Source: Tubulanus polymorphus (lineage: Eukaryota; Animalia; Nemertea). Taken from it: a stretch of 64,000 nt of DNA. Below, one piece after another: positions 10,667 to 61,516 of this stretch. Numbering within the stretch: the stretch's first letter is position 1; every line of letters starts with the position of its first letter. The stretch is taken from contig NC_134030.1 in assembly GCF_964204645.1 (NCBI RefSeq), forward strand, positions 5,994,778 through 6,058,777. The letters run 5' to 3'. The position numbers were made by a program, and so were the translations under genes. A model generated the notes under the pieces. The model had not been told where the DNA came from and made no database searches. It saw only the letters and a program-made list of their open reading frames with translations.

Positions 10667-10817
10667 TGATTCCAGTAGGTGGCGGCATTGTAGTTTATGT
10701 TCACCCATCTTTTTATATATCCATCGCCAATTCAGTGTACTCATAATTTTTCCTTAAACGAGTATAGCTTTCGCGGTATTATTCCCAATCCTTAAATACC
10801 TCGGTAGAAATTTGTGA

Positions 10818-37202: not shown

Positions 37203-37235
37203 TTAGGACTTGCCCTACACACATTATCATCAAGA

Positions 37236-42082: not shown

Positions 42083-44194
42083 ATGAATATTGTAAACGTC
42101 TTGGCTTTACTTTTTGGTAGGTTTAAAATTCATGGGTTTGCATTGATGAATTTTTAACTAAATAGATTAAGATATTTGAATGTCTCTGATTCCAGTTTTA
42201 TTCGAGGGTGCTGCGGCGGGGTCAGTTCTTCTGTATGGTCCTGACAGTTCTTGGAAAGATGACTCTCCTAGCACCGTCACCTGTCCTTCCAATATGAAGG
42301 TTTACATTTGTTCATGTCACGGCTTTTCTTGCTGCGACGGTACACACATATCCGCGGATGGACAGACTTGTACAGCGTTCAACGCTGATGGATGCCCGTC
42401 GACTAAGGTATGTGTATTTTGGATAGTACCGTGGCAGGGGCGGATCCAGGGGGATGAGTAGACAGTATTGGAAGGAAATTTAAGGGCACCTTTCTGATCT
42501 TAGGGCACACCCAGTATCCAGGTTAATGCGAGCGCCGAAGGCGCGAAGTCCTTAGAGGGGGTTCTGGGGGCCTACCCCCAGAAAATTTTGAAAATATGGT
42601 ACCATTTAAAGGCTTTTAGAGGGCTTCTAGAGGCTAGCAGAGCAATCCAGAATAAACGAATTCGAGACAAGATTTCAACAGATGCGGATAAAAAATGAAG
42701 CTGGCGAACCCATGAAAGAATGGTTGTCGCCAACTTCGCCTAGTGCCCCTATAATCTTTAAAAGTGCCCCTTAACAATTATACAGAATACGGATAAGTGC
42801 CCCTTCATTGTTAACAATCGGCAAAAATTGCCTCGTCTTCACATTTATCCTTATGTCGTGTGCCATCTTCCAAACCAAAAGTGCCCCTAAAATTTTAAAA
42901 ATTAGGCAAAAAAGTGCCCTTTTCTTCAACATTTTCCGCGTATAGTGCCCTCTTCTAAAGTACGAGTGCCCCTTTAGCCCTCCCTGAAAAGGCAAGACCA
43001 AGGTGCCCTCATCTAAAGCATGAGTGCCCCTTGCAAAAGGAAAGTGCCCTTTTTAATTTATCATGATTAAAGGCTTTACAAATATGATTATCTCTCCTCA
43101 CTTTCTCGGCAGCAGTATATACCAATTAATTTTATAATTATGCCCGGATTACGGACACGGAATTAGCGGTTGCTGAAATAATGCCGTCAAAAATATTGCC
43201 GGTGAAATTTCGAAGGGCACTTAAAAATTCTAGACCGTATTGGGCAATACGGCTAATACGGTCTGGGTCCGCCTCTGCGTGGCGTACTAACTAGGATTTA
43301 GAGCATCCTCCTCTGGAGGGACTCGAACCTGATGGCATCGCTACACTCAGCCACGGCACGAACCCCTGCATCAGTAGACCGGGTGCGCAGGTACATGCGC
43401 AGCTTTCCGAACGAAAACTGGCGGCACCAATCAGATTGCTCGTTGTATAATCGTTGAGGCAAATTTCAAGGAAGAACTATAAATGGGAAAACCCGGGATA
43501 AAATAAAACGGGATTTCTGATTGGCTAAAAATCACATCATCTGAACTGCGCATGTATCTGCGCACACGGTCGATTGTGGCAGGGTTTCATGCCGTGGAAA
43601 TCTCGATGCCATCAGGTTCGAATCCCTGCCGGGGGAGGATGGATTTAGAGGGGCCCAGCGGTCGGCCTCCCCGTGTTTGTTGCCAAGATATTGCACGGTA
43701 ATTTTGTGTCAGAATCATCCTAGCTGCACAGAAAATATTGTTCGTGTACTATAATGGTCCCCTATCCGTAATCAGAAAAAAAGTAAAGATTTTACCTCGA
43801 ATTTCAGGCGTTAACTCGGTGTGTAACAATCGATGCCGGCAATGTTTACCGTGTCGTTAGTAGTGGAGTGCAAATGCATCAATACAGTATATCTGTTCAG
43901 TGTCCATTTGGGTTAAGACCGGAGCAATGTACAAAGAACCTGCCGTATGTAGCATTTTCACAACATTCAACTGAATTTTTCAACCTAACACTTCATCTAT
44001 ATATGTCTAATACAATTTGCTGCAGCATAGATTTATATACTTTCAGATGGAGTCATGAGTATCGAGGCACGCTCTCAAGGTATAAGGCAGTAACGAAAAG
44101 TTATGGAGGGTGTTCCATCAATTCTTATGTGTGTAGGAATACTGGTTGTGAGATACAAGCGGTATGTTTTAAACACGCTCCCAATCTTTGGTAA
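42083..44194 (+). CDS. Cys-rich secreted protein, array copy D (subfamily 1); third intron enlarged by two MITEs
   Basis: MNIVNVLALLF|VLFEGAAAGSVLLYGPDSSWKDDSPSTVTCPSN..; exon from ~43808 ALTRCVTIDAG..; last exon WSHEYRG..GCEIQAVCFKHAPNLW*. Confidence 0.85.
42435..43277. mobile_element. Non-autonomous DNA transposon, CAG...CTG termini, 5-bp TSD (CGTGG), many internal GTGCCC repeats
   Basis: TIR caggggcggatccag / ctgggtccgcctctg; empty site present in paralogue F (~59168). Confidence 0.85.
43304..43641. mobile_element. Mutator-like MITE, ~100-bp imperfect TIRs, 9-bp TSD (GATTTAGAG)
   Basis: catcctcc..tcgaacctgatggcatcg / cgatgccatcaggttcga..ggaggatg; TSD 43295-43303 and 43642-43650; empty site in paralogue F (~59185). 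Confidence 0.88.
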
Positions 44195-44580
44195 ATCGTA
44201 TGTAACAACAAAACATGAATGAATGAAATCTCTTAAATTCGAATTTTTCTATTCTTTATTATTGATTTATTATTTACGATGCAGCGGATAGCGTCATGAT
44301 ATCATTCGTCAGATTTGGATTTGGATTCGACAGGTTTTGATGAAATTATGAGTGGGGATCATTGTTCATTTTATTATGAGGGTATATCTCGTCTGAGATA
44401 TGCCCAGACGTCAGACAGTGGATGTGAGGTAAAAACAAATCTTACCGCCCAAAAACAAAACTTAGCGCGCGAAATAAAAATATTCCACTTTGGCGCGCTA
44501 AAGGTGCCCACGATTTCGTTTTTGCGCGGTCGTTAAGTAGCGCGAAAAAACATATATTCAAATAAATTACGCGCGCTTCT

Positions 44581-44760
44581 ACGATTACGATTACGATTAC
44601 GATTACGATTTTATTTACACTCCAACCATTTCCATGGTATATGGAGGAAAACTATTACACATTTACATACAAATATTTACAAAACAACACTGAAGTGATT
44701 AAAATTTAGAGAATAAAAACGTAACAAAATATACATACATCAACTAATTACAATACTATG
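44581..44760 (-). mobile_element. 3' end fragment of a retroelement with (AATCGT)n tail (duplicate at ~60590-60780)
   Basis: (acgatt)5 followed by tttattt, i.e. antisense polyA signal plus hexamer tail. Confidence 0.5.
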
Positions 44761-45728
44761 TATACTATTGGATGGATCTATAGACATCCAAGCCGGTTTT
44801 AATGAATTTAGCTAATTTGACCGTTGGGTTTTTCAGAATATCAAGGGTATGAAAGGTATTCAAATTCAAATAGTTTTTGCGGGGTTCTATGATGTCACGC
44901 TTTCGCCATCTATTAGATTAAACAGTAACTAAAGAAATAACTAATCTATGTAATCGTATTAACTAATTTCAAAAGAAAACTAAGAAGAGCTTGAATATGC
45001 CAATAATTCAGTTCTGATCGACATGTCATTCTGCAACCGGTTAGTCAGGTAATCTTCCTCCATATGATAAGTAATAGATAGATGAATACATTTGTAATGA
45101 ACGATTCATGATTTCAGCTGATTATACAACTCAAGATGAATATTGTAACTTTCTGGTAGGTTTAAAATTCATAGGGTTGCATTGATGAATTACTAACTAA
45201 ATATCTGTTCTACAATGAGGATTACGAGCGGGTGAGATCTATACCAACAACACAAGTAAGAAGTTTACCAACACTGATTGAATAACATTGTTTTTCAATC
45301 GACTTATCAACTAATTCATGTTTCATGTAATTTCACACAATACAGTGTACAGACAAAAAAAACAAACTTCAACAGTAAATATGATTAAGCCCTTAACGAA
45401 CGAATACGTGTAATGTGAGCAGGTGTTTTTTGGACTTAAGAAAATCGAAACTACATGTATTTTCATAAGATGATACACACCTGCCAACACTTAACAATAA
45501 CGGTCCTGGGCATCTCAATTGGTATTTACTCCCGAATTAAAATATAATTTATATTCATTGTATATACGTCTGTCAGTGAGTGTTTTAGTTCTGATCGACC
45601 TGTCATTCTACAACCAGTTAGTCAGGTAATCTTCCTTCATATAATAAGTAATAGATGAAAACATTTATAATGAACGATTCATTCACGCCTGTCATTTACA
45701 TTAATTTCAGCTGATTATTCAACTCAAG

Positions 45729-46810
45729 ATGAATATTGTAAACGTTTTGGCTTTACATTTTGGTAGGTTTGAAATCCATTGGGTTGCATTGATGAATTAC
45801 TAACTAAATAGCTTAGAAATATCGGAATGTCTTCAATTCTAGTTCTATTCGAGGGTGCTGCGGTGGGGTTAGTTCTACGGTATGGTCCTTACAGTGCTGG
45901 CACAGATGATGCTCCTAGCACCGCTACCTGTCCTTCCAATATGAAGGTTTACTCGTGTAAATGTGACAGCAATTGCTGCGATGGTACAAAAATTTTCTCA
46001 GATGGACAGACTTGTACAGCGTTTAATGGTGACGGATGCCCGTCGACTAGGGTACGTGTATTTCGGATAGTCTCAAGGCATACTTGTGAAGGGCGGATTT
46101 AGCGGGAGACCGAGCTCCCTATCTTTGCCAAGATAATATTCCCCCTATTTTTTGCGAATATAACATTTAATATTGCATGGCATTTTTTCAGAATCACTCT
46201 AGATGCTGCGAAACTTGTTAATTTTTTTAATTTTCTTGGGGAGTGCCTGCCCCCACCTCCCCTTATAGGATCCACACGTTCGTGTACAAATGTTTATGCA
46301 ACAACAACGCCTACGATATTTTAGCCCCTATTCTAAATTCCGGGATCCGCCCCTGCTCGTTTTCCTGAAAAAAAAAAAACATTAAAATGTTAACTTGAAT
46401 TTCAGGCAGTAACTAAGTGTATAAAAATCCAAGCCGGCAACGAACTACGTGTCATCAGTAGTGGAATCAAAATGAATCAAGAAGTAATATACGTTCGGTG
46501 CCCAAATGGGTTCATGCCGGAGCAATGTACGAAGAACCTACCGTATGTAATATTTCATTGAATAATTTCAACCTATTAAGATTTTATCTATGTACCATAC
46601 TTTATTGTCAAAATACATTCTATGTTTTTTTTTCTAAGATGGAATCATATGGATCGAGACCAGTTTCCATGGTTCAGGAAGAGAGTAAGCAAGCATATAA
46701 GCAAGGTTTACCGCGGTAGCGGGGGATGTGTCATCAATTCTGGTTTTTGTTTGAAGTATGGATGTGAGATACAAGCAGCATGTTATAGATACGCCCCCAG
46801 TCTTTGGTAA
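45729..46810 (+). CDS. Cys-rich secreted protein, array copy E (subfamily 2)
   Basis: MNIVNVLALHF|VLFEGAAVGLVLRYGPYSAGTDDAPSTATCPSN..; AVTKCIKIQAGNELRV..CPNGFMPEQCTKNLP; WNHMDRDQFPW..CEIQAACYRYAPSLW*. Confidence 0.85.
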
Positions 46811-49402
46811 ATCTTATGTAACATGCCAAAATATATGAATGAATAAAATCATCTCTTAAAAAATAATTCGATATCTTTTTTTGATGAATTTTTATACGAT
46901 GTAGTGGATAGATATTTTTGTAATTACGTCAGATGATGATATCATTCGTCAGTTTCGTGTTGGTGTGGATTTTATGATTCGAATGATGAGATTCATACGA
47001 GCTACTGATATTTATTCATACGTATGACATCTTCGAATGAGTGGAAATCATTATGATCTCCCTGAGTGACATAATGTGTGGACTCGATACACGCTCAGTG
47101 ATTTCTCAGTACCGGCATTTGCTAGTTGAAGTGAGACTGGGGCTGTTACTGTAGGTTCATTCTATACCGATATATCCATATAATATTAGACGATACACAA
47201 TATCCGTGTATGATGATAACGAGAGAAATCCCACAATAACGAAGCCAAGATTGAAAAATTCTATATCAGAATGATTATATAAGAGGAGTGACGTTTCGGC
47301 TAACAACTGTTAGCCATCATCAGGCGTTCAGAGAACAAAATAAAATAACAGGATATTTATACAAGAATATAACAAATGATTAAGATTAAAGGATTAAGAT
47401 TAAAGTAATTAAACAACAAAAACCGGAACACTAAAGAAGAAAACAAAGAAGGCAAACGACGAACTATAGGGCGAGATTAAAGTAATCTAAAAACAAAGCC
47501 CAGAGGGTTCAAAGGCGGACAAACTAAGGGGTAATCAGACAAAAAGGAGCAATCAAGGAATAAGTGAGGGAGTGAGTGAGTGGAAGTGTCAAACGGAGGA
47601 AAACAAGCTAACAGGACTAGAAAAAATAGGGTACAAGCGAAGCGAGAAATTTAGAGATCAAAATATTGTGAGGAGAAAATCCGTTTATGGAAACATTATG
47701 GAATCTGTCCTTATTATTAGAATATGGATAAATGTGTTAATTTGAATAACGGTTTTTCTCCTGACAATATTTTGATCTCTAAATTTCTCGCTGCACTTGG
47801 ACCCCAATTATTTTAATCCTAATTTTCGGGCCAAAAATTCACGTGTGATCGCGGCTATTGATTTGTTAATGTATAAGCAATCGGTTGATTAGTAATTGTC
47901 CAAGCTATACTCTAATTTTCAGTCAAATATATCCACGTGAAGGCGGAATCGGTCGACGTGTTTTCGCTCTAGTCCAGAAAAATTACCGCTCAAAGTAAAA
48001 CGGTGACTACGTTTAAAATCTAAACACTTTCGATCTTTGGAATACTGTCGAAGGAACCGTTGGGCAGCATCTGAAGCCACAAGAGCTGCCCTAGACCGTG
48101 TTTCACCGAGGAAAACCGTACGTGAGTGTGCTCAAACTTTAATAGTTGCTTAACACGTTTAACACAAATCAGCTGATATCAAATTAGCGCAAAGTTGAGG
48201 AGATCGTTATAGTGTAAGAAAGACGGCTCTGCAGAAATCGCCGTTCGTCAGATATCGACTTTTCTTTTTGTTGGTTATGTTGGTTTTGTGTTTAAATTGG
48301 AATTGCTTCAAATAAGTCGTCATTTTTAATTCAATCGTGGTGCATACTCGACATACACAACCGATCCGAACTCAAATCGTCCCGCTCTACTGAACAAGAA
48401 GTACCGAGCTGTAAACAACCAAAGCTTGTGACTCCCGGTCGCTCATTATTCCCGTTATTGCAGTCGTCAATCTGACATGACCGCTCAGTATTTCCGTTAA
48501 CAAACGCGTGCGCAAAAATAGCGATACTGAAAAGAAAAGGAACAAAAATGTCCACCAACGAGTGTAAGAGCTGCAGCAACATCGAGACTCTGCTCCAGGA
48601 AATCCTTCAGAAAATCCGCATTCTACCGGAAGTAAACGAAAAAGTTGACCGAAAGACTACCTCACTAGCAAACCTAACAACTCGTGTTGTATCCGTCGAA
48701 GCTGATCTGAAAGCGAATAAAAATTCCGTTGCGAATATGAGAAATGAGCAAGACGAAATACGAAGAAATCTGATCAACTCATCAAAATTAACCTCTGAAG
48801 TCAGAAAAATTGCCGAAAAAACCGCAGAACGTGTCAACTCTCTTGAGAATTACGGCCGTCGGGAAAATTTGATTTTTTCGGTATCCCAGAACAGGACCGC
48901 GAAAACTGCGAGGAACTAGTGCGTCAAATAATCAGGGAGAAACTGGAGATCGACCAAGCAAACCATATCAAATTTCAGCAGGTTCATAGGCTGAATCGAA
49001 AAACCAGAAAAACCGGAACGCGTGGCATTATTGCACGATTCGTACTTTACACCGACAGAGAGCGCGTCAGACACCAAGCTTACAAAGAATAGCGAATTTC
49101 ATAACGTAGCGAAAGTAACCGACCAACCGGCTTACGAAGAAGCGGTGGCCAATCAAGCGAAGATAAATCCCCCTCGCGTTGGACTTTTCACTTTTCGCGC
49201 TGACCTTGAACACGTACTAACAGCGACATCGACAGCACCACGCAACTTGCCCTCTAGACAAACGGCCAAGCGCATTGCATCGGACGAAACTGTAAACGTG
49301 GGCGCAGCCTTGGAAGAAGCGCGCGTGGTATTAGACATGAACGCGGACCAATTCATCCCTACCGAAGCTAATCGTGAAGCTTCCCCCTCGGTTGAGGCAT
49401 AA

Positions 49403-51022
49403 CAGGAGACCGCAGAGCATATTTCGACTAAGTTATCGACATTAACTATAAATGTATGCGGCTTAAAAAGCAAAGAACATATTCCCGAGTTTCAATCGCT
49501 GATTAAATCACATGACATAATAATCCTGACCGAAACGAAGCTTAACGATACAGATGAGGCCTGGGCTAAGAACTTCTTCAACAATTTGGGGTATACTGTA
49601 TTCTTAAAAAATCGTGAGAAACTATCTTCATTCCGGTCCGGTGGCATAGCGATTGCGATAAGCAATATTTTAGCTCCTCATGTAACTATTATCAAAAGTT
49701 CTTGTAATTATGTATTATGGCTACTTGTAGACAAGCATATAATTGACAAAGATAAAAATCTACAAATAGGGGCTGTATACTTACCACCAGAAACCAGTAA
49801 ATTTGGCGGAGTAGACTGCTTTAATGCATTAAATATCGATATTCTCGAGAAATTTAATAGTACAGAATCCTTTTTATTATTATGCGGTGACTTTAACGCC
49901 TATACCGGAGCACTCTTAGACTACAACTCACCAGAAAACTACATAACTGTTGGATCAGACCTTGACAACGAGCTTCTTTTAGAAACCTATACTTGTGAAC
50001 AGTTGCTTTCCAGTTATGACATATTAAGACGCAAAACTAAAGATCTCTCGGTGAATAACTATGGGTCCCGTTTAGTAGAACTGTGTAAAAACCATAGTAT
50101 TATTATTTTGAACGGCAGGATAGCTCCCGATCGATTGACCGGTGACTATACGTGTCATAAAGGCGAAATTAAACATATAGTAGATTACATGATCGCATCC
50201 CCTCATTTGATCAGTTCTGTAAGACTGTTCCAGGTTTTAGAATTCGAAAAGCTTTTCTCTGACGTCCACAGTGGTTTAATTGCAGAGTTCAGTTTTAAGA
50301 TCGAAATTCCCGACCTGGCCTCTGTGGACACCAGTGAAAACTGTCAAGAGAAAGTTAATTGGAAGCCAGATCTGAAGGATCAATTTGTTCAGTCCTTAGA
50401 AAGGGAAATGCCTCTTCTCAATAGTATCAGTGAATGTCTCGCAAACAACACATTAAATGCAAACGAGGCCAACGACAGGCTTTGCAATATATTGTTAATC
50501 ACAGCTGGTAACGTCATGGGTAAGCGGGTTTTGAAACGTAAATCCAAACCGCGGTCAGCCGTTAAAGCCACTAACGACGTAACAGTTAGACTAGCGAGGT
50601 CTGACTATCGCCGTGCCAAACGTGCGTACCTAAGCCTGCGCACTAGAAATAATCATTTTGAAATGAATCGTGCCTTTCGTAAATATAAAAAAACTATTAA
50701 CAAATGGAAAAACGACAAAAGGCAAGAATTTAGCAGGAAAATTAGACAATTATCAAACTCTGACCCTCATACATTTTGGAAACTATTCAAAAAATCAGAT
50801 AACAATTCGTGCAAAGTTCCAAACTCCGATCTCTTCCAACATTTCAAATCTATGAATGAAAGCCCAGTTTTAAACGGAAACGAACCTCTATTAAATAACG
50901 TTGATGAATTTATAGGTAGTAACTTTGACCATGGCCCTTTGAATCAACCGTTCTCTAAGGAAGAAATCTCAAAATGTATTAAAAAGCAAAAAAAATATCA
51001 AGGCCTGTGGTATCGATGGGAT
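49403..51022 (+). pseudogene. Outer LINE ORF2, N-terminal endonuclease half
   Basis: APE motifs; ends ..KACGIDGI at the nested insertion, with an A-run frameshift ~50990. Confidence 0.85.
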
Positions 51023-51305
51023 TAAATAATAAATTAAATAATAAATTTATTTCCACAATAAAATTACAACATGTCATAAAGAGATATACAAATATGAAAT
51101 GTTTTAATATAATGTGGAGGAGATTAGATGAAGCCAATGAAGGCTTATAAAATCTCTAATCCCCTAGCATACACCGATTCACTCAACTCATACACACATG
51201 CAGTCATACACCTTCACCCAACATGCACCCACACACGTAGTCAATCACACTATCTTTCATTCACTCTTACAATCTGGTAATAGATGGCAGATACAGACAG
51301 ATTAA

Positions 51306-54230
51306 TTACAAATTCATTAGATACAATTTAAGTTTTCTTTTGAAAGTATCTATACACGACAGTTGTTTTAAACTTTTTGGCAAATTATTCCAGACAACAG
51401 GACCAGAAATTTTTACTGTGAATTGTGTTTTGTTAGTCCGAAATCTGGCAACACGAAAAGAATTCATATTTCTGGTTGAATACGAGTGTATATCAACATT
51501 CTTTTTGAAATACCGATTAAAGGAATTTGGCAATTTTGAATTATTGAATTTGAACATAAATAGACTTAATTGAAATTTTGTAATATGTCTAAATTTTAGG
51601 ATATTCAATTTTTTGAAGATAGGGTCAGTGTGTTCTAGGAAATGAGACTTATTAACTATTCTTACTGCTCTTTTTTGTAGTAGAATTAGTGGATTTAGCT
51701 TGTTTGCATAATTACTTCCCCAGATTAAATTACAATATTGTAAATGAGGATAAACAAAACTATAATAAAGGGTAATAAGGATATTTGATGGGAAATGCTT
51801 TTTTAATCTGGTTAAAATTCCAATGGAGCGTGACACTTTACTGCAGACATATTTGATATGGACATCCCAATTTAATTTGTCATCTATAAAAAGACCAAGA
51901 AAATTCGTACTATGTACACGTTTGATTAATTCTCCATTTAACCAAATGGAAGAATTAAAGTGATCTACACGACCAAAAATCATAAAGTGGCATTTCGCAA
52001 TATTTATTGAAAGTTTGTTTACTTGATACCAGATGCCAAGTTTCGCCAGTTCAGAATTTACTATGGAAACCAATTCTTTGATATTAGAGTTACTATAAAA
52101 ACAATTCGTGTCATCGGCAAAGAGGATAAAATGGAGTAATTTGGACGCATTTATGCAATCGTTAACGTATAATAAAAATAACAAAGGGCCTAGAATAGAA
52201 CCCTGAGGTACACCAATTGATACATTTAATGGAGACGATAAGGTATTGTTGAAACTTAAAACTTGACTCCTGTCAGTCAGGTAGCTTTTAAACCAATCAT
52301 GAGGAACACCTCGGATTCCGTAATAATCAAGCTTCATTAACAAAATGTCATGGTTAACGGTGTCGAATGCCTTAGACAGGTCCAAGAATAATCCAATAGT
52401 AATATTCTTATTTTCCAAGGCTTCAGAAAGATTATCAACAACCTTGGTTAGTGCCAAATCTGTTGAATGTTTTGAACGAAAGCCAAACTGGTCGGGGGTT
52501 ACAATATCCTGTTTGTTACAAAAGGAAACCAATCTGTTGTAAACTAGTTTTTCCAGAATTTTTGAGAAGCTAGGAAGCAAAGATATGGGTCGATAATTAT
52601 TTAAAGAATTAGGGGCTCCGGATTTAAACAAAGGACAAACTTTCGCAATTTTGAGTTCATTGGGAACTATTCCAGTCTGAAGACTACGGTTAAAGATATG
52701 GGATAAAGGGAACTTAATGATGTCAATCACCTGTTTTATAACAAAAATACTCAAACCATCGACACCGGCACTCTTCTTTAAGGGGAAACCCGAGACCACA
52801 TCACTTATTTCATGAGGTGAAGTCGGAAAGAGAAATAGACTTTCATTGACACGTTTATTCATATATTGATGAAAGGATTGCCCTGTATCAGGGATTTGAG
52901 TAGCAAGCCTTTCACCAATATTTGCAAAAAAATTGTTAAACTCGTTGGCGATGTTTATATTACCAGAAATAACACGTTGATCAGAAGTAAAAGAATTAGG
53001 CATTTTAGAATAAATGTTTCTACCTAAAACTGTGTTCAACAGTTTCCACTTTTCTTTCATATCATTTCCAGCAGCGAGCAATTTTTCAGAATAATAATTA
53101 GATTCGGCTTTGTTAATAAGCTTTGAAATGAGATTTTTGTACGAGTTGTATTTTGATTTTATTTTTTCTGAACGTGTTCTAATAAATTTCCTATAAAGGT
53201 TGTTTTTTGTTTTAATTGCTGCGATAATACCAGGAGTTATCCATGGTTTATGGAATGTGGGATTAATATGATTAACTGGTACCAGAGGGAAAACTTGATT
53301 GAAAACTAAAGAAACTTTTTCAATGAAAGTAGTGTAAGCAACTGAGGGATTATCAGATGAATACACTTCATTCCAGTTAATATTCATAAGTAATCTGTTG
53401 AAATTAGAAATATTGCGCTGCGAGAAAATTCTAGTTTTAAAAGGTTGTCTGTCAGACAGAGGCTGATCACCACTGCAGATAGTAAATATTGGGTAATGAT
53501 CCGAAAGGTCGGTCATAAAAATCCCAGATTTGTGAACATGTCGCAAATCGTTACAAAAAATATTGTCAATTAAGGATGTCGAGTCACAAGTTACTCGAGT
53601 TGGCTTGTCAATCAAAGGTGAAAAAGAATGAGAAAATAAAGATTCGAGAAATATTTCAGTATCTTTGTGCGTATCATATTTCATGAGATCTATATTAAAG
53701 TCCCCCACCAGGTAGCAAAGTTTGTTCTCGCGAGTAATTTCTGCCGTTAAAACTTCAAATTCATCTTGAAAAGTTGGTAATTTTCCTCCTGGAGGTCTAT
53801 ATATTACTCCAATAATAATATTGGATTTTTTATCTAAAACAATTTCGATGAATAAAGATTCGAAAGTATGATTCCTAGTTGATAAGTCTGTCCGTACTTT
53901 GAAATTGAAATTTTCCTTTAGGAAGAGAGCTACGCCGCCACCAAGTTGACCATTGGCGCGGGATTTAAAAATACTCTTGTAACCGTTAATTCTATACAAA
54001 TTGGAGTTAGAATTATTTGAATTAGTCCAAGTCTCGGTCAAACCAATGACCGAAAATTGACCATTACAACAATTCAAAAAATCAGTTAAACTGTCAAAAT
54101 TTTTGTTGACACTTCTGATGTTATGAGAAATGATGGATAGACTTCCCCGTTCAAGAGGAGAATCCTCGTCAACATTAAAGTACAAACAACTGTTGTTTGT
54201 ACAAGGTATATCAGTTACTGAGCTTTTCAT
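51306..54230 (-). CDS. LINE ORF2 (APE endonuclease + reverse transcriptase), 974 aa, intact
   Basis: HNIRS, LTETW, GGGVA, IYRPP, GDFNID, IDNIF, SDHYPI; YRPISLL, QFGFR, DLSKAFD, GVPQGSILGP, FADDT, FLG, LQKRAVR. Confidence 0.95.
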   Translation of the reverse strand: MKSSVTDIPCTNNSCLYFNVDEDSPLERGSLSIISHNIRSVNKNFDSLTDFLNCCNGQFSVIGLTETWTNSNNSNSNLYRINGYKSIFKSRANGQLGGGVALFLKENFNFKVRTDLSTRNHTFESLFIEIVLDKKSNIIIGVIYRPPGGKLPTFQDEFEVLTAEITRENKLCYLVGDFNIDLMKYDTHKDTEIFLESLFSHSFSPLIDKPTRVTCDSTSLIDNIFCNDLRHVHKSGIFMTDLSDHYPIFTICSGDQPLSDRQPFKTRIFSQRNISNFNRLLMNINWNEVYSSDNPSVAYTTFIEKVSLVFNQVFPLVPVNHINPTFHKPWITPGIIAAIKTKNNLYRKFIRTRSEKIKSKYNSYKNLISKLINKAESNYYSEKLLAAGNDMKEKWKLLNTVLGRNIYSKMPNSFTSDQRVISGNINIANEFNNFFANIGERLATQIPDTGQSFHQYMNKRVNESLFLFPTSPHEISDVVSGFPLKKSAGVDGLSIFVIKQVIDIIKFPLSHIFNRSLQTGIVPNELKIAKVCPLFKSGAPNSLNNYRPISLLPSFSKILEKLVYNRLVSFCNKQDIVTPDQFGFRSKHSTDLALTKVVDNLSEALENKNITIGLFLDLSKAFDTVNHDILLMKLDYYGIRGVPHDWFKSYLTDRSQVLSFNNTLSSPLNVSIGVPQGSILGPLLFLLYVNDCINASKLLHFILFADDTNCFYSNSNIKELVSIVNSELAKLGIWYQVNKLSINIAKCHFMIFGRVDHFNSSIWLNGELIKRVHSTNFLGLFIDDKLNWDVHIKYVCSKVSRSIGILTRLKKHFPSNILITLYYSFVYPHLQYCNLIWGSNYANKLNPLILLQKRAVRIVNKSHFLEHTDPIFKKLNILKFRHITKFQLSLFMFKFNNSKLPNSFNRYFKKNVDIHSYSTRNMNSFRVARFRTNKTQFTVKISGPVVWNNLPKSLKQLSCIDTFKRKLKLYLMNL

Positions 54231-54255
54231 ACAAATAACAAGTCATGGTGTTTGA

Positions 54256-55575
54256 CTAATATTCAACGTATTGTTTTTTCCTGGTTTTTTCTATTGAAGG
54301 TGGTGTTCCGGATAGTGATCTCTCCTTTCGTTTTGCCGAGGTCGGTGTGCAGAAAGCATCACTAGTGACGCCATCTATTGCCTCGCAAAAGTGTTTAAGC
54401 AATGCAAGCTTGCCGGTTTCACTGAGGTGAATACCACTTTTATCGGTCGGCGAATAAAAGTGGTCCAAAGCTTTACCAGACGGTTTAAGTTTCAATATAG
54501 TGTCATTATCAATAAACATGATATTCTGTTCCGCGCATAGTTTCCCGATATGGTTGTTAACTGCTATTGCAAGGCTGTTGTACTCTTTTACGTTGTTGGA
54601 GTTACCTTTTCTTGGAATGATACTAGAGAAGTGAATCTGGGCTTCATTGAAATGTTCCGTCGTTTTAGCCATGGCTAAGGACAGATTCACCACTACAGTG
54701 TCACTGTCATTTTTGTTGTTACTTATATCGTTTGTACCTAAGTGGAGAATAACGTCAGTAATCGACGATCGATCTAGAATCTGATTGTCAGCTTTATTCA
54801 GAAGCGATGAAATCTTTTCACCGCTAGCACCAGGCTGGCAAATAACCGTGCCATTCGGAAACTCGAAGTCACGGAGGTTGGAATCACCGATTACTAATAC
54901 ATTATTTGTAATAGTATTGGACAGCGGTTCGCTTGACGTTTTCTCGCAATAGTCACGCGCTTCGTTGGATATCGTGTCGCTCAGAGTCACGGTACAATCA
55001 CGAGCTTTATGCTCTGCGGCGCCACATTTGAAACACTTAAATCGTGACGGACAGTCAGCTGAGCGATGATCGCCAAGGCAATGTTGACACCCTATACCCT
55101 CACAGTACACTCTAACGCGGAATCCATCGATTGATGTGAAGTTTGGAATAACTTTATTGACTTGTTTCAATTTCAAATATCTGGTCCCAGTATATATTTG
55201 AGTGTCCCTTATCACGCCTTTTTTTACCGATCCTTCAACATAATCACCATAATTTTTAATAAAGTTGACAATGGTCAGATCCGACATCTCATACGGAGCA
55301 TCGACTATTTTCACAGACAAAAAGGTTAAATCTACATCATCCGGAGTGATTTTATTCCCTCGAAAGATTAATCCGGATTGTTTCAGAAGATCTTTACTCG
55401 TTTCATCTACTGCAGTAATTATGCAAAATTTTGACGTTATTTGAATCGCTGCTATTTTACTCACGTCACCGTCGGCACTGTCCTTTATAGCGTTAATTAC
55501 ATCTTGATGAAGAATTTTTCCGTTTACCTCATTCAGAGGAAACTTGATAGAACACTTCCTATCCAATGAACCCAT
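54256..55575 (-). CDS. LINE ORF1, 439 aa: RRM-like region, two CCHC zinc knuckles, SGNH esterase-like domain
   Basis: TGTRY motif; CQHCLGDHRSADC and CFKCGAAEHKARDC; VIGDSN..QPGA..HLGTND..DKSGIHLSETG. Confidence 0.9.
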   Translation of the reverse strand: MGSLDRKCSIKFPLNEVNGKILHQDVINAIKDSADGDVSKIAAIQITSKFCIITAVDETSKDLLKQSGLIFRGNKITPDDVDLTFLSVKIVDAPYEMSDLTIVNFIKNYGDYVEGSVKKGVIRDTQIYTGTRYLKLKQVNKVIPNFTSIDGFRVRVYCEGIGCQHCLGDHRSADCPSRFKCFKCGAAEHKARDCTVTLSDTISNEARDYCEKTSSEPLSNTITNNVLVIGDSNLRDFEFPNGTVICQPGASGEKISSLLNKADNQILDRSSITDVILHLGTNDISNNKNDSDTVVVNLSLAMAKTTEHFNEAQIHFSSIIPRKGNSNNVKEYNSLAIAVNNHIGKLCAEQNIMFIDNDTILKLKPSGKALDHFYSPTDKSGIHLSETGKLALLKHFCEAIDGVTSDAFCTPTSAKRKERSLSGTPPSIEKTRKKQYVEY

Positions 55576-55675
55576 TACTCGTTATAAATCCACAGTGAAA
55601 ACACTTGATAAATAATTTTTGTCAGGACATATACGAATGCGTGATCGCACTAGTCCGCCATCTTGAAAGCGAAAA

Positions 55676-57539
55676 GGATACCGAATGAGTTCCTCAAAAG
55701 TGCCGAAGAATCACTACTACCTTTATTAGTAAACCTTTTTAATAATGCTCTCGATACAGGCACTATTCCAGAGTCATGGCTGAAAGGCATCATTGTCCCT
55801 TTCTTTAAACAAAAAGGTAGCGAAAAGGACCCCGATAATTATAGGGGAATCACCCTTTTTAGCAATATTGGCAAACTATTCACTAGTATTATCAACGAAA
55901 GAATTACTGAGTACTTAGAAATTAACAATCTTTTGCTACAGAACCAGGCCGGTTTTAGGGAGAACCATAGCATTATGGACCACGTATTTACCCTCAAGGC
56001 TCTAGTCGACACCTTCCTAAACAACAATCAAAAACTCTATTGTATTTTCATAGATTATAAAAAAGCCTTCGACTCTATCTGGAGAAAGGCCTTGTGGCAC
56101 AAACTAATTAACAGTGGTGTCACTGGCAAAGTACTTAACGTTATACATAAAATGTATCAAGGTATCAAATCATGTGCTTTTTCCGATAATAAAATGTCAG
56201 ATTTATTTGATAGCTATTTAGGGGTAAGACAAGGTGAAAATCTGTCTCCTATATTATTTTCTATCTTTTTAAACGACCTGGAAAGCTATCTATTACAACG
56301 AAATAGTCCAACCCTAAATTTTTTCGGACCTAACAATGTGCCATGGTTCCAACTTTTAATTCTCATGTATGCAGATGACACGGTTTTATTAAGTGATTCG
56401 CCCGAGGGACTCCAAAAACTTATAGATAATCTCTGTGAATATTGCCAAGAATGGAAACTTTCAATTAATAATGACAAGACAAAGGTCATCGTCTTCTCGA
56501 AAAGAAGATTAAGAATCCTACCAGAATTTTACATTAATGGTCACAAATTAGAAATAGTTGATAAATTCAAGTACCTGGGTGTTCTCTTTTCATACACTGG
56601 ATCGTTCACACAATGTCGTAAAACTCTTTCGGAACAAGCTATGAAAGCGGTATTTTTTGTATTAAAAAAGTCAAGTGAACATTCATTAGACCTTGATCTG
56701 ACCTTAAAACTTTATGATAGTATGGTATTACCTATATTGCTGTTTGGCTGTGAAATTTGGGGATATGAGAACACACAGGTACTCGAGCGTGTTCAGCTAC
56801 AATTTTTTAAATATTTACTCAGATTGAAAAGGTCTACGTCTAGTGTATTTATTTACGGTGAGCTTGGGCGCTATCCTTTAGAGATTTATGTTAAACTGAG
56901 AATCGTTAAATTTTGGACAAAATTGATAAATCAGACTGAACATTTCTCTTCTTTTATGTACAAATATATCTATCAAACGCACCACGGTGGTCGGAGTAAC
57001 GCTTGGATTCTTAATGTTAAAAATATTTTTGTAAAAAATGGTCTCGGCCACGCTTGGGAAACTCAATCTGTACCCAGTGCTAATTATATTTATAGTATTT
57101 TGAAACAGAGACTCATGGATCAGTACGCACAAGGCTGGCACTCCAAGGTCAACGAAACACCAATTTGCTTAACCTACAAGCGTTTTAAAAACTGTTTTAA
57201 ATTCGAAGAGTACCTGACCAAATTACCCCCCAAATTACTCCGCCTAGCCTTGTGTCGATTCAGATGCTCGAACCATAAGTTACCTATTGAAATCGGTAGA
57301 TATCGCCAGATTGAGCGAAACCATAGAATTTGTCAGAAATGTCATTTGGCAGCAACTGGAGACGAATTCCATTTTCTTTTAGTATGTCCCTTTTTCAAAG
57401 CCTGAGAAACAAATTTATACCTAGTTACTTCTGGCAACATCCCAATGAAAATACCTTACATAACCTTTTCTGTTCGAGAGGTAAAACTTTGCTCAATCTG
57501 GCGATATTCATTAAAAAAGGTATCAAATCATTTACCTAA
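55676..57539 (+). pseudogene. Outer LINE ORF2, RT and C-terminal half
   Basis: RT motifs including YADD; frameshift near 57400 before the natural end. Confidence 0.88.
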
Positions 57540-58821
57540 TATAGTGTATAATTATCGGATCTCGATACTACAATTCCGCCTCATCTTTTGCATTATAATT
57601 TCATTATAATTATAATTATTATTATTATAAGTATTATATTACTGCTATCACTATTATTATTATTTTTACTATTATCATAATTGTTATTATTATAAATATA
57701 ATTATTATTAATACTATCATTATATTTTTTGTAATATGCTGTAATCTATGCGCTACTTTTGTGCTCTGTGCAATGTTATTATAACTTGTGGAGTGAATAA
57801 ACTAAACTGAAACTGAGATACTCAATTCATTCCGATCAATCAAATGTGTCAAAATATTTCGTATTAAATGTAAATTGTGAAAATATAAGCTCTTTGGTGT
57901 CTATGGTGGACCATGGACGTATAAACTCTCGTTTATAGTTTGTACGGCCCTAGTTGGACAGTCTTTGAAATACAGTCCACGCGTTTGAGGAACATATATT
58001 ATAATTCTCGGTATAATTATAACATTCATTATAATTCATCGAGCACATACCTGGCATTTTGTACAATATTGTTGTACGAGAATAAAACGACATTAGTACA
58101 TATTCACGATTCTTGTTGATATTTTTCATTAGCCTATGTTTATGGCAACAATTCCACTGGTGATGCTTTTCAATCGAAAATAGAGGGCTCTCATAAGATT
58201 CATCACCACCAGGGAAGGACTGGACGTGTAAGCCATTAATCTGACAATTTTAAGCGGAAGAAATGAAATTCATTTAACTCGTCGAAGAAAGAGTCCGAGC
58301 CATGATTCAATATCTTCCGTACGTTCCCGTCAACACGCATTGTTTGATAAAGTGTATGATATTCTTATTGAAGTCAAATGAATGGATATGTGTTAAGCTC
58401 GTGGCAGAAATATAAAATTTTCGTACTAAAATCAATTTGACATATGCATGTTTTGTGTGAATATATTTGCGAAAAATTGCAGATGTAGTTGAGAACGAAC
58501 GAACGAATAGGACTACTAAATGTGAGCAGGTGTTTTTTGTCTAATGAAAACCGAGACTATTTTCAATAGATCAAATATACACTTACTCAATACTGAATAA
58601 ACTTTCAACATTTCTGGGCATTTCAATAGGTTTTAATTGACATAATCAATGATTTAGCGTTATATTCATTGAACGTATATCGATGAATGTTTTAGTTCTG
58701 ATCAACTCAACAACCAGTCAGGTAATCTTCCTGCCTATGATAAGTAATAGATCTGAATACATTTATAAAATTCATTTACGCCAGTCATCTATATTAATTT
58801 CAGCTGATTATTCAACTCAAG

Positions 58822-60205
58822 ATGAATATTGAAAACGTCTTGGCTTTACTTTTTGGTAGGTTTAAAATTTATGGGTTTGCATTGATGAATTATTAACTAA
58901 AAATAGATTAAGATATTTGAATGTCTCTGATTCCAGTTTTATTCGAGGGTGCTGCGGCGGGGTCAGTTCTTCTGCATGGTCCTCACGGTGCTTGGAACGA
59001 TTCTCCTAGCAACGTCACCTGTCCTTCCAATATGAAGGTTCACATTTGTACATGTGACGACGATTTTTGCTGCGACGGTACACACATATCCGCGGACGGA
59101 CAGACTTGTACGGCGTACAACGATCCTGAATGCCCGTCGACTAAGGTATGAGTATTTTGGATAGTACCGTGGCGTACTAACTAGGATTTAGAGGGGCCCA
59201 GTGGTCGGCCTCCCCGCGTTTGTTGCCAAGATATTGCACGGTAATTTTGTGTCAGAATCATCCTAGCTGCACAGAAAATATTGTTCGTGTACTATAATGG
59301 TCCCTATCCGTAATCAGAAAAAAAGTAAAGATTTTACCTCGAATTTCAGGCAGTAACTCGATGTGTAACAATCGATGCGGACAATGATTACCGTGTCGTT
59401 AGTAGTGGAGTGCGAATGCGTCAAAAAAAGATATCTGTTCAGTGTCCAGTTGGGTTAAGACCGGAGCAATGTACAAAGTACCTGCCGTATGTAGCATTTT
59501 CACAACATTCAACTGAATTTTTTCAACCCAGGCGCGGATCCAGACTATCGCACATGCAGCACGTGCGGTAGCCGCAGTTTTCAAATGCCCTTGAAAAATG
59601 TTTGTGTCGGGAAAAAAGTAAATAAAAGGGCACACGATTTGTGCGCCATAAAGAATAATTGCCTTTCTGTTCTAGGACTAAAGCAAAATGTGAATGAAAA
59701 TAAATTGCCCAAAATCAATCTTAGGCCTTTTCCTTTGCTCAAAAGGGCACTATTCTAAATGAGACATTATTGTTGCTCCATAAATCTAATCGAAAAAGGG
59801 CAAATTTCGCCAAACATCTAAAAAAAGACGCAAGCAAATTCAATGTGAAGGCAAATCTAGTGGAATGATACCAATAAATGGCACTCAAACTCAAACTCAC
59901 TCGCTGGGCATTAATACTGGCCCTTTTCAAAGTTGGTGCCCTTTTTCCACTGTGCTGTAGTCACCGAATGGCCCTGGATATGCGCGTGCAACCTAACACT
60001 TTATCTATTTATGTCTAATACAATTTGCTGCAGCATAGATTTATGTACTTTCAGATGGAGTTATTTGTATCCAGGCACGCTCTTAAGGTATAAGGCAGGT
60101 ATAAGGAAAACTTACGGTGGGTGTTTCATCGATTCTTATTTGTGTAGGAATACTGGTTGTGAGATACAAGCGGTATGTTTTAAACACGCCCCCAATCTTT
60201 GGTAA
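58822..60205 (+). CDS. Cys-rich secreted protein, array copy F (subfamily 1; recent duplicate of D)
   Basis: MNIENVLALLF|VLFEGAAAGSVLLHGPHGAWNDSPSNVTCPSN..; AVTRCVTIDADND..CTKYLP; WSYLYPG..GCEIQAVCFKHAPNLW*. Confidence 0.85.
59529..59988. mobile_element. Non-autonomous DNA transposon, CAG-type termini, 5-bp TSD (CAACC)
   Basis: caggcgcggatccag / ctggatatgcgcgtg; AAGGGCA repeats; empty site in paralogue D (~43981). Confidence 0.8.
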
Positions 60206-61516
60206 ATCGTATGTAATAACAAAACATGAATGAATGAAATCTCTTAAATTCGATTTTTTCTATTCTTTTTTATTGATTTATTATTTACGATGCAGCGGAT
60301 AGCGTCATGATATCATTCGTCAGATTTGGATTTGGATTCGTCAGGTTTTGATGAAATTATGAGTGGGGATCATTGTTCATTTTATATGAGGGTATATCTC
60401 GTCTGAGATATGCCAAGACATCAGACAGTGGATGTGAGGTAAAAACAAATCTTACCGCCCAAGAACAAAACTTAGCGCGCGAAATAAAAATATTCCACTT
60501 TGGCGCGCTAAAGGTGCCCACGATTTCGTTTTTGCGCGGTCGTTAAGTAGCGCGAAAAACATATATTCAAATAAATTACGCGCGCTTCTACGATTACGAT
60601 TACGATTACGATTACGATTACGATTTTATTTACACTCCAACCATTTCCATGGTATATGGAGGAAAACTATTACACATTTATATACAAATATTTACAAAAC
60701 AACACTGAAGTGATTAAAATTTAGAGAATAAAAACGTAACAAAATATACATACATCAACTAATTACAATACTATGTATACTATTGGAGGGATCTATATAC
60801 ATCTAAGCCGGTCTTAATGAATTTAGCTAATTCGACCGTTGGGTTTTTCAGAATATCAAGGGTATGAAAGGTATTCAAATTCAAATAGTTTTTGCGGGGT
60901 TCTATGATGTCACCAGTTAGTCAGGTAATCTTCCTCCATATGATAAGTAATAGATAGATGAATACATTTGTAATGAACGATTCATAATTTCAGCTGATTA
61001 TACAACTCAAGATGAATATTGTAAGCGTTTTGACTTAACTTTCTGGTAGATTTGAAATTACACACAAAAACACAAGTAAGAAGTTTTACCAACACTGCAC
61101 ACAACCCTGGTTCTACCTTTCTACCTATTACTGGCCAACTTCATCATGTTGATTATTTCGTTCGAACGAAGTAATCTTTTCGTTCGAACGAAATGATTTC
61201 GTTCGAAAGAAAATATCTTTTCTAAAACAGATTTAGCCCTCTTTTGTGTTTTCATCACAATTTCGGTTTAAAAAGGCCTGATCATGACATGGGACGCGCG
61301 ACCCCTCTGGTGTAAAATTTAAATGTTAGAATATAAATGAATGTTAACGGTACAAAGCCTAATCTATTTGAAAATAAATTTTTTGTCAATATTATCTGAA
61401 GTAAAGTGAGTGGGTGATATTGGAAGAATGTACATCTTATAGTTCGAACGAAAAACCTTGCGTTCGAAGGAAATAGTCTTTGGGTTCGAACGAAAAGATT
61501 TACCGCGGTAAATCTT

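What the first reader, a model, noticed from the sequence alone, without database searches (positions are those of the whole stretch)
42083..60205. Mature-peptide exons evolve faster than their own introns: strong diversifying-selection signature between copies D and F
Seen: D and F lie in a recent segmental duplication (about 39.9-44.9 kb vs 47.1-60.9 kb) whose non-coding DNA differs only sporadically. In the module-1 exon I count 16 codons with amino-acid changes plus one codon indel against 2 synonymous changes (e.g. YGPDSSWKDDS vs HGPHGAWN-DS; CSCHGFSCC vs CTCDDDFCC; AFNADGC vs AYNDPEC). The next exon has 9 non-synonymous vs 3 synonymous codons. The signal-peptide part of the module-1 exon and all Cys are unchanged. 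Known: conserved signal and introns with hypervariable inter-Cys loops is the pattern of conotoxin, snake-venom and gamete-recognition genes. Inference: an arms-race target, with charge changes (many to Asp, Lys or Arg) in surface loops.
Basis: seen in the sequence. Interest (0 to 1): 0.85.

Follow-up and report, generated by a model that had tools for sequence, protein, structure and literature searches.

The report
Fast-diverging duplicated resistin-like secreted genes
Two recently duplicated ribbon-worm genes for small secreted cysteine-rich proteins differ about four times more in their coding exons than in the surrounding non-coding DNA; this pattern is known from venom and immune genes and points to adaptive diversification, although the classic dN/dS test on this pair alone is not significant.

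Summary
Genes D (42083-44194) and F (58822-60205) lie in a tandem segmental duplication. Its aligned non-coding DNA differs at 75 of 2,900 sites (2.6%), while exons 2-4 differ at 48 of 494 (9.7%).

- Replacement changes exceed the neutral expectation taken from the duplicate's own non-coding DNA by about 4.7-fold (40 observed, 8.5 expected, P about 1e-14).
- They fall on both lineages, mostly F, and leave all 14 Cys untouched.
- In module 1 they cluster in three alternate loops of a PCSK9-tail/resistin-like fold.
- Site models detect a positively selected class across the eight-gene array (M7/M8 p=1e-7).

Against a strong reading:
- Pairwise dN/dS is only 1.5 (p=0.2-0.3).
- The branch-site test on F is not significant.
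- Silent sites are also about 2.3-fold elevated.

With site classes defined from the other six paralogues, D-F dN/dS is 2.3 (p=0.02). I found no donor paralogue and no conversion-tract structure. An F-like transcript, spliced as predicted, exists in a second animal and carries further replacements.

The genome is Tubulanus polymorphus. The scan had noted this protein family elsewhere in the genome. The listed notes do not mention this exon-versus-intron signal. The protein's function is unknown.

The parts
39871..47076 (+). Segmental duplication, copy 1 (spacer X, gene D, gene E)
   Evidence: blastn blocks at 93-98% identity to copy 2
47054..61895 (+). Segmental duplication, copy 2 (spacer X', about 10 kb of retrotransposon sequence, gene F, truncated remnant E')
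42083..42116 (+). Gene D exon 1 (start codon and first part of the signal peptide)
   Evidence: GT donor
42196..42407 (+). Gene D exon 2 (end of the signal peptide plus most of module 1)
   Evidence: its peptide hits PCSK9_C-bearing proteins at E=4.5e-14
43808..43944 (+). Gene D exon 3 (end of module 1 and start of module 2)
44047..44194 (+). Gene D exon 4 (rest of module 2, with the stop codon)
58822..58855 (+). Gene F exon 1
   Evidence: the junction 58854/58936 is seen in a spliced contig of run X4
58937..59145 (+). Gene F exon 2: 16 replacement codons, 1 codon deletion and 2 silent changes relative to D
   Evidence: X1 contigs cover 58961-59213 with no variant called in the exon
59350..59486 (+). 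Gene F exon 3: 9 replacement and 3 silent codons relative to D
   Evidence: the splice from exon 2 to exon 3 (skips 204 bp, GT..AG) is seen in run X4
60055..60205 (+). Gene F exon 4: 10 replacement codons, 1 codon insertion and 3 silent changes; the last 20 codons carry no replacement
30675..31662 (+). Paralogue A, intact, 176 aa; the closest outgroup to D and F in coding sequence
33704..34493 (+). Paralogue B, a pseudogene: no exon 1 found, frameshift in exon 3, stop codons in exon 4
38417..39485 (+). Paralogue C, intact, 181 aa
45729..46810 (+). Paralogue E, intact, 183 aa
61516..61628 (+). E' remnant of exon 4. It differs from E at 4/113 sites (3.5%), near the non-coding rate, and serves as an internal control.
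63336..64000 (+). Paralogue G (runs off the window). H and I follow at window-equivalent positions 66200-67204 and 69777-70722.
42436..43640 (.). About 1.2 kb in D intron 2 that has no counterpart in F (insertion after the duplication)
59523..59988 (.). 466-bp high-copy repeat inside F intron 3, absent from D
   Evidence: contig depths in the thousands

Best explanation
D and F are young tandem duplicates, 2.6% apart in non-coding DNA. They belong to a nine-copy array of four-exon genes in the ribbon worm Tubulanus polymorphus. Each gene encodes a secreted protein of about 156 aa in its mature form, built from two PCSK9-C-terminal/resistin-like cysteine modules.

After the duplication, point substitutions that change amino acids accumulated in the mature protein far faster than neutral DNA changed. 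This was strongest on F and also present on D. The signal peptide, all 14 cysteines and the C-terminal strand stayed fixed. The most likely cause is positive (diversifying) selection on exposed loop residues of a binding surface. The same kind of selection acts recurrently on the whole array.

Shown here: the rate contrast, its distribution, the fold of module 1, the splicing, and expression of an F-like allele.

Inferred: that selection rather than a mutational or recombinational process drives it, and that the proteins bind a fast-changing external partner (microbe, prey, predator or gamete).
For: Rate contrast:
- Non-coding divergence is 2.6% and exons 2-4 diverge by 9.7%.
- The contrast holds separately at CpG and non-CpG sites.
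- Context-specific neutral rates from the duplicate's own non-coding DNA predict 8.5 replacement changes in the mature CDS. 40 are observed, P about 1e-14.

Lineages: changes were polarised with A, B and I. F has 26 replacement and 5 silent changes, D has 13 and 3, against about 4.25 and 1.7 expected per lineage (P=9e-13 for F, 5e-4 for D). The non-coding branches of D and F are equal, 0.0174 and 0.0168.

Codon tests:
- The replacement:silent split of 40:8, against a neutral share of 0.71, gives p=0.043.
- Branch model: omega_F is 1.8 against a background of 0.60, p=0.015.
- With site classes taken only from the other six paralogues, D-F dN/dS is 2.3 in unconstrained codons (p=0.02) and 3.5 in codons with P(omega>1) of at least 0.5 (p=0.017). 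D/F differences are enriched at such sites (p=0.001).
- Family site models: M1a/M2a 2dlnL=25.0 (p=4e-6), M7/M8 32.2 (p=1e-7), M8a/M8 23.3. They are robust to tree topology and column masking. 18 null simulations gave a maximum 2dlnL of 6.9.

Controls and distribution:
- The dead remnant E' differs from E by 3.5%, near the neutral rate.
- 10 of the 17 module-1 replacements lie in the b1-b2, b3-b4 and b5-b6 loops, and none in the opposite loops (p=0.004).

No donor:
- The genome holds only nine exon-2 copies, and D is the closest to F at 89%.
- 17 of the 31 F-derived bases are unique among all copies.
- Sites where D=A but not F and sites where D=F but not A interleave as expected at random: 22 runs against 23.6 expected, p=0.35.
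- No significant shared fragment involves D or F.

Expression: a spliced exon 1-2-3 contig of an F-like allele is present in run X4.
Against: - Pairwise dN/dS is 1.49 by NG86 (p=0.20) and 1.5 by ML (p=0.27).
- The branch-site test on F gives 2dlnL=1.5, not significant. On D it gives p=0.024, but that rests on two multi-nucleotide codons.
- omega_F is not significantly above 1.
- Silent changes are also in excess: 8 observed versus 3.4 expected overall, and 5 versus 1.7 on F, P about 0.02-0.03. Selection on the protein does not predict this.
- The array has a recombinant history: mosaic flanks and significant shared fragments for I-B and C-G. This can inflate site-model tests.
- The second animal's F-like transcript carries the D state at 4 of its 5 replacement differences. 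That could be D-to-F conversion rather than segregating new mutations.
- The codon models are my own implementation, not PAML or HyPhy.
- Only one genome was available, and the function is unknown.
Confidence: 0.62

Rival explanations
1. Ectopic gene conversion or unequal crossing-over wrote short stretches from other paralogues into the exons of D or F. The donor could be lost, unassembled or allelic. Replacement and silent differences would then be imported together.
For: Silent sites are elevated about 2.3-fold over non-coding DNA. The family shows recombination: mosaic flanks and significant I-B and C-G fragments. In coding sequence D is as close to A as to F. The second-animal allele has D states at 4 sites.
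Against: The only close copies in the genome are the nine of this array, and D is the nearest to F. 17 of 31 F-derived bases are found in no copy, and the others match different paralogues singly. F-specific sites interleave with D+F shared derived sites, so ten or more separate tracts within 500 bp would be needed. No D or F pair passes the fragment test.
Confidence: 0.12
2. The duplication is older than the non-coding DNA suggests (silent divergence about 0.07). Introns and flanks were later homogenised by concerted evolution, while selection kept the exons different, as is described for MHC genes. This is still a diversity-favouring scenario, but without a burst of new substitutions.
For: dS of 0.072 exceeds the non-coding 0.026. 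Non-coding blocks vary from 1.0% to 3.8%. Conversion is active in the array.
Against: It needs at least four conversion tracts that each stop at exon borders. Lineage-specific insertions (1.2 kb in D intron 2, 466 bp in F intron 3) sit inside the supposedly homogenised DNA. Coding change is 2.7 times greater on F than on D although the non-coding branches are equal.
Confidence: 0.12
3. A raised mutation rate confined to the exons, combined with relaxed constraint on the mature protein and no positive selection. The exons are GC- and CpG-richer, or mutation could be transcription-associated or targeted, as once proposed for conopeptides.
For: The exons are 46% GC against 34% in non-coding DNA, and CpG sites mutate about 3 times faster here. 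4 of the 8 silent changes are CpG transitions. Silent sites are in excess. Pairwise omega is not significantly above 1.
Against: The exon excess persists at non-CpG sites, 8.7% against 2.3%. After context correction the replacement:silent split still departs from neutrality (p=0.043; p=0.02 in the a-priori unconstrained codons). Constraint is clearly not relaxed on the 14 Cys, the signal peptide or the last 20 codons. The E' remnant, with the same base composition, evolves at 3.5%.
Confidence: 0.08
4. Assembly or annotation artefact: collapsed or chimeric copies, or wrong exon models.
For: Tandem repeats are hard to assemble.
Against: Independent contigs of run X1 reproduce F exons 2 and 4 with no variant called in an exon. 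The splice junctions are confirmed by a spliced contig. The NCBI model of paralogue H uses the same exon structure. All models have GT-AG introns and intact ORFs.
Confidence: 0.02

Closest known systems
Crotaline snake-venom phospholipase A2 isozyme genes ('accelerated evolution'; Nakashima et al. 1993 and 1995, listed as refs 22-23 in PMC6062510)
   Same: Tandem paralogues whose protein-coding regions diverge faster than their introns and flanks, with KA/KS near or above 1, a conserved signal peptide and a conserved Cys framework. The detail that silent sites there also exceed intron rates is from my memory of those papers; I could not fetch them.
   Different: The fold and phylum differ. Here the contrast is seen within one genome between copies only 2.6% apart. 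Venom or any other function is not shown.
Conus conotoxin gene superfamilies (Duda & Palumbi 1999, ref 20 in PMC6062510)
   Same: A conserved signal sequence and a hypervariable mature region with invariant cysteines, in recently duplicated loci.
   Different: The product here is a two-domain protein of about 156 aa, not a short peptide. There is no propeptide. The end of the signal peptide and module 1 share one exon.
PCSK9 C-terminal domain modules and the resistin/RELM head domain (Pfam PF18459, PF18463, PF06954; PDB 2qtw, 3bps, 1rgx, 1rh7)
   Same: Module 1 has the same small disulfide-rich beta fold. The top Foldseek hits are PCSK9 and resistin at probability 1.0, with 1.9 A rmsd over 73 columns. 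The sequence links to proteins that pass the PCSK9_C1/C3 thresholds.
   Different: These are stand-alone secreted two-module proteins. They have no subtilisin domain and no resistin coiled-coil. They do not themselves reach any Pfam threshold. Similar uncharacterised proteins occur in a bryozoan (P0012, Watersipora subatra) and in a mollusc-rich cluster.
MHC class I/II loci with homogenised introns and diverse exons
   Same: Exons are more divergent than the adjacent introns, and selection favours diversity.
   Different: That pattern is allelic and maintained by balancing selection. Here it lies between paralogues, and lineage-specific insertions sit in the introns. This comparison is from my general knowledge and was not tested.

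Membership tests
PCSK9 C-terminal module / resistin-like fold | Direct Pfam match (PF18459, PF18463 or PF06954) above the gathering score | tested here: not met
   No such hit for the D or F exon peptides at E up to 10, only a weak MiAMP1 hit for F exon 2. No hit for the full-length paralogue H, P0001.
PCSK9 C-terminal module / resistin-like fold | Significant sequence similarity to proteins that do pass the Pfam thresholds, over the module | tested here: met
   D exon 2 matches P0002 at E=4.5e-14 and P0003 at E=1.8e-11 in a library of 1.8 billion proteins. Both carry PCSK9_C1/C3 at E of 1e-16 to 1e-19 over the matched stretch.
PCSK9 C-terminal module / resistin-like fold | Six-stranded disulfide-rich beta module that superposes on solved PCSK9 CTD or resistin structures | tested here: met
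   In the AF2 model of P0001, module 1 has pLDDT 95-98. Foldseek ranks 1-26 are PCSK9, resistin or RELM-beta, with probability about 1.0 and E about 0.02. Module 2 was modelled poorly (pLDDT below 50), so it remains inconclusive.
PCSK9 proper (proprotein convertase) | Prodomain plus subtilisin-like catalytic domain upstream of the modules | tested here: not met
   The proteins are 176-183 aa: a signal peptide followed directly by two modules.
Resistin/RELM hormones | N-terminal coiled-coil helix that trimerises the heads | tested here: not met
   The model predicts no helix ahead of module 1.
Accelerated-evolution secreted gene families (conotoxin / venom PLA2 pattern) | Mature-peptide exons more divergent than introns and flanks between close paralogues | tested here: met
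   9.7% against 2.6%, p below 1e-9.
Accelerated-evolution secreted gene families (conotoxin / venom PLA2 pattern) | Conserved signal peptide and invariant cysteine framework | tested here: met
   One replacement in 24 signal codons. All 14 Cys are invariant in the eight intact copies.
Accelerated-evolution secreted gene families (conotoxin / venom PLA2 pattern) | dN/dS above 1 | tested here: inconclusive
   For the pair: 1.5, not significant. In a-priori unconstrained codons: 2.3, p=0.02. Family site class: omega about 3.3 in about 15% of sites, p=4e-6.
Accelerated-evolution secreted gene families (conotoxin / venom PLA2 pattern) | Product is a toxin, immune effector or gamete protein (expression in a gland or the gonad, with activity) | not testable with these tools
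   Only one spliced contig from a run of unknown tissue is available. The nemertean toxin papers found by title search were not read, so whether they list this family is unchecked.

The most novel reading that the evidence does not exclude
The array encodes a previously unrecognised spiralian repertoire of variable binding proteins, either a nemertean toxin family or an immune-recognition family. It would be built on the resistin/PCSK9-tail fold, with three CDR-like hypervariable loops at one end of module 1. It would diversify both by post-duplication bursts and by high allelic polymorphism: in a second animal the exons differ by 3.1% and the non-coding DNA by 0.4%.
Probability: 0.3. Interest if true: 0.75.

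Novelty: new member of a known kind. Interest (0 to 1): 0.5.

Why it matters
Coding exons that outrun their own introns are one of the clearest genomic marks of proteins caught in an evolutionary conflict. Here the mark falls on an uncharacterised family with the resistin/PCSK9-tail fold in a ribbon worm, a phylum whose protein toxins and immune effectors are barely known. This nominates the array, and F in particular, as a candidate for toxin or defence function. It also gives the fold a possible role as a variable binding scaffold outside vertebrates. The case shows as well that pairwise dN/dS lacks power on young duplicates, whereas using flanking non-coding DNA as the neutral yardstick does not.

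Tried and rejected
- The search for homologous proteins with D exon 2 alone found nothing, because of its length filter. With P0001 it found only P0001 itself.
- The look-up of encoding contigs for P0001 returned no record.
- A profile of the nine exon-2 peptides against PDB sequences gave only chance hits at E above 0.5.
- Aligning exon-3 and exon-4 fragments to P0001 failed. MAFFT placed them on module 1 because of the internal repeat, so A4 was discarded. Module 2 of the model therefore stayed at low confidence.
- The first NG86 run was biased by a misaligned codon indel (Sd 11, omega 1.12). It was corrected.
- The idea that D's exons were overwritten by A, which would make F only appear derived, was tested with a runs test and rejected.
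- CpG hypermutability as the sole cause was rejected.
- Nakashima 1993 (PMC46847) could not be read.
- A literature search for stand-alone invertebrate PCSK9/resistin-like proteins found nothing relevant.
- The joined (spliced) D and F proteins were never handed to any search or fold tool. Searches were done exon by exon by reference, and the structure is that of paralogue H (database protein P0001). Joined coding sequences were used only inside scripts for the codon analyses.

Full report
WHAT IS THERE

The window is G000:C6:5994778-6058777. A database protein identical to my model of one array member (copy H) is NCBI 'uncharacterized protein LOC141907268 [Tubulanus polymorphus]'. It lies on a contig of 23,044,209 bp, the length of C6. 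The genome is therefore that of the ribbon worm named in an earlier scan note.

From 30.7 kb to about 70.7 kb (window-equivalent) lies a same-strand tandem array of nine copies of a four-exon gene:
- A: 30675-31662
- B: a pseudogene at about 33.7-34.5 kb
- C: 38417-39485
- D: 42083-44194
- E: 45729-46810
- F: 58822-60205
- G, H and I: these lie at or beyond the window's end
- E': a truncated remnant at 61.0-61.9 kb

All eight intact copies have GT-AG introns and encode 174-183 aa: a signal peptide plus a mature protein with 14 invariant cysteines. A protein search of the whole genome finds close relatives only in this array.

FAMILY

The exon peptides and the full-length copy H reach no Pfam threshold. 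However, D exon 2 matches metagenomic and transcriptomic proteins at E=4.5e-14 and 1.8e-11. Those proteins carry PCSK9_C1/PCSK9_C3 domains at E of 1e-16 to 1e-19.

An AlphaFold model of copy H gives module 1 pLDDT 95-98, while module 2 is poor. Its best structural matches are the PCSK9 C-terminal domain, resistin and RELM-beta. The ESM Atlas points the same way. A 175-aa relative exists in the bryozoan Watersipora subatra.

The proteins are thus stand-alone secreted pairs of PCSK9-tail/resistin-like modules. They are not PCSK9 or resistin orthologues, because they have no catalytic domain and no coiled coil.

THE OBSERVATION

D and F sit in a tandem segmental duplication, 39871-47076 versus 47054-61895. 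Copy 2 is interrupted by about 10 kb of LINE-type retrotransposon sequence and by a deletion of most of E'.

Over 2,900 aligned non-coding positions the copies differ at 75 (2.6%; 1.0-3.8% per block). Exons 2, 3 and 4 differ at 10.0%, 10.2% and 8.8%. Exon 4 adds 10 replacement codons plus one indel against 3 silent.

The signal-peptide codons of exon 2, all Cys and the last 20 codons carry no replacement. Contigs from an independent run reproduce F exons 2 and 4 with no variant called in an exon, so this is not an assembly error.

IS IT SELECTION?

(a) Against the duplicate's own non-coding DNA, the exon excess is highly significant. It holds separately for non-CpG sites (8.7% versus 2.3%, p=3.5e-9) and CpG sites (20% versus 6.5%, p=0.003). 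I applied context-specific non-coding rates to the mature coding sequence. This predicts 8.5 replacement and 3.4 silent differences, and 40 and 8 are observed.

(b) Polarising with A, B and I assigns 26 replacement and 5 silent changes to F and 13 and 3 to D. Both replacement counts exceed the neutral expectation (P=9e-13 and 5e-4). The two non-coding branches are equal.

(c) The classic pairwise test fails. NG86 gives dS 0.072, dN 0.108, omega 1.49, p=0.20. ML gives omega 1.5, p=0.27.
- A branch model puts omega_F at 1.8, above the background of 0.60 (p=0.015) but not above 1 (p=0.2).
- The branch-site test is not significant for F and marginal for D.
- Corrected for mutation bias, the 40:8 split departs from neutrality at p=0.043.

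(d) I defined site classes only from the other six paralogues, where M2a is still favoured (p=0.002). With these classes, D-F dN/dS is 2.3 in the 107 unconstrained codons (p=0.02) and 3.5 in the 17 codons with P(omega>1) of at least 0.5 (p=0.017). D/F differences are enriched at such codons (p=0.001).

(e) Across the eight intact genes, M1a/M2a gives 2dlnL=25.0 (p=4e-6; about 15% of sites at omega about 3.3), M7/M8 gives 32.2 (p=1e-7) and M8a/M8 gives 23.3. The result survives the alternative topology and removal of gapped or ambiguous columns. Eighteen null simulations reached at most 6.9. These models are my own numpy implementation, run on an IQ-TREE topology.

(f) The dead remnant E' differs from E at 3.5%, close to the neutral rate. 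This is an internal control within the same duplication.

GENE CONVERSION AND OTHER RIVALS

The array does recombine. A's 5' flank resembles D/F while its 3' flank resembles I. A permutation test in the style of GENECONV finds significant shared fragments for I-B and C-G.

For D and F, however, the evidence is against conversion:
- No pair involving them is significant.
- D is the closest copy to F exon 2 in the whole genome, at 89%.
- 17 of 31 F-derived bases occur in no other copy, and the rest match different paralogues one at a time.

I considered the alternative that D's exons were overwritten by A, which would make F only look derived. It predicts blocks. Instead the 34 sites where D=A but not F and the 17 derived sites where D=F but not A interleave as at random: 22 runs against 23.6 expected, p=0.35.

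What remains unexplained is the roughly 2.3-fold excess of silent changes (P about 0.02). Half of them are CpG transitions in GC-richer exons. That only partly accounts for the excess. It leaves room for some short-tract conversion, for an older duplication with homogenised introns, or for a locally raised mutation rate.

WHERE THE CHANGES FALL

I mapped the alignment onto the confident module-1 model. Ten of the 17 module-1 replacements, plus the codon indel, lie in the b1-b2, b3-b4 and b5-b6 loops (20 columns). None lies in the b2-b3 and b4-b5 loops (9 columns), and seven lie in 41 strand columns (p=0.004). If the strands run up and down, the three variable loops share one end of the module and would form a CDR-like surface. 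This is an inference, because I could not read the model's coordinates.

On F there are gains of Asp/Glu at codons 75, 78 and 94 and of Arg/Lys at 105, 107 and 110. The differences at 53-55 and 109 are polarised to D, which lost acidic residues at 53-55 and Lys at 109. Net pI hardly changes: 8.2 for D and 7.9 for F.

EXPRESSION AND POLYMORPHISM

One run of a second sample (X4) holds a 322-nt contig that joins exons 1, 2 and 3 of F at exactly the predicted GT..AG junctions, so an F-type gene is transcribed and spliced. That contig differs from the reference F at 9 exon positions (3.1%), whereas the little non-coding DNA covered in that sample differs at 1 of 249 positions (p=0.024).

Of the seven differences listed, five are replacements. 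Four of those are the D/ancestral state at codons where D and F differ. This is either ongoing, still-segregating diversification of F, or D-to-F exchange, or an unassembled extra copy. It rests on a single low-depth contig.

VERDICT

The best reading (confidence 0.62) is adaptive diversification of the mature protein after a recent duplication, within a family under recurrent diversifying selection. The strict claim of a 'strong' pairwise dN/dS signal does not hold, and a contribution from recombination or mutation bias is not excluded.

The pattern itself is a known kind (venom PLA2 and conotoxin genes; PMC6062510 and its refs 20-23). The family and phylum are new for it. The function (toxin, immune or gamete role) is untested.

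PROCEDURE

The spliced D and F proteins were not submitted to any search or fold tool. Searches were made exon by exon by reference, and copy H (P0001) stood in for the full-length protein. Pseudogene B was only described and aligned as it is.

Noticed in passing
window 47504-57815: The roughly 10-kb spacer that splits copy 2 of the duplication holds non-LTR retrotransposon ORFs. These are an APE endonuclease plus reverse transcriptase (51309-54230, minus strand), an ORF1-like protein with a zinc knuckle and a GDSL esterase (54259-55575, minus strand), a second RT ORF (55663-57402, plus strand), and a weak endonuclease-RT match (49586-51022, plus strand).
   Followed up: partly
window 59523-59988 (F intron 3): A 466-bp insertion absent from D. 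It is a high-copy repeat, with contig depths in the thousands. Contigs in X1 and X2 join 59522 to 59989 without it. They could come from the D locus or reflect an insertion polymorphism.
   Followed up: no
window 42436-43640 (D intron 2): About 1.2 kb present in D and absent from F, so it was inserted after the duplication. It shares GC-rich SINE-like motifs with other introns of the array.
   Followed up: no
window 33704-34493: Copy B is a pseudogene. No exon 1 was found, there is a frameshift in exon 3, and there are two stop codons in exon 4. It shares a significant 30-site fragment with copy I (alignment nt 246-300).
   Followed up: partly
window 45136 and 61012; 61516-61628: An extra exon-1-like start (ATGAATATTG...) lies upstream of E and is duplicated upstream of E'. 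E' keeps only the second half of exon 4; about 1.4 kb holding exons 1-3 is missing.
   Followed up: partly
window 30675-31962 versus L010 7777-9000: Mosaic ancestry. A's 3' flank is 92% identical to I's, while A's 5' flank and intron 1 are closest to D/F. The 3' end of intron 2 in D and F is closest to I. This points to unequal crossing-over during growth of the array.
   Followed up: partly
window 58936-59431 (run X4, contig 24): An expressed F-like allele in a second animal differs from the reference at A30D, N32K, N38T, F56S and D94G, plus two silent sites. Exon difference is 3.1% against 0.4% in the non-coding DNA covered.
   Followed up: partly
window 10744-12216 versus 14048-15537; 23314-24283 versus 32507-33426; 28285-29453 versus 37232-38370: Further direct repeats at 72-85% identity upstream of and between the array members. 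They were not examined.
   Followed up: no
P0012 (XP_067927881.1, Watersipora subatra): A bryozoan protein of 175 aa aligns with the worm proteins over most of its length, so this stand-alone form may not be limited to ribbon worms; its own module content was not confirmed (no Pfam hit). Other relatives fuse the modules to PAN, WSC, somatomedin-B or metalloprotease domains.
   Followed up: partly
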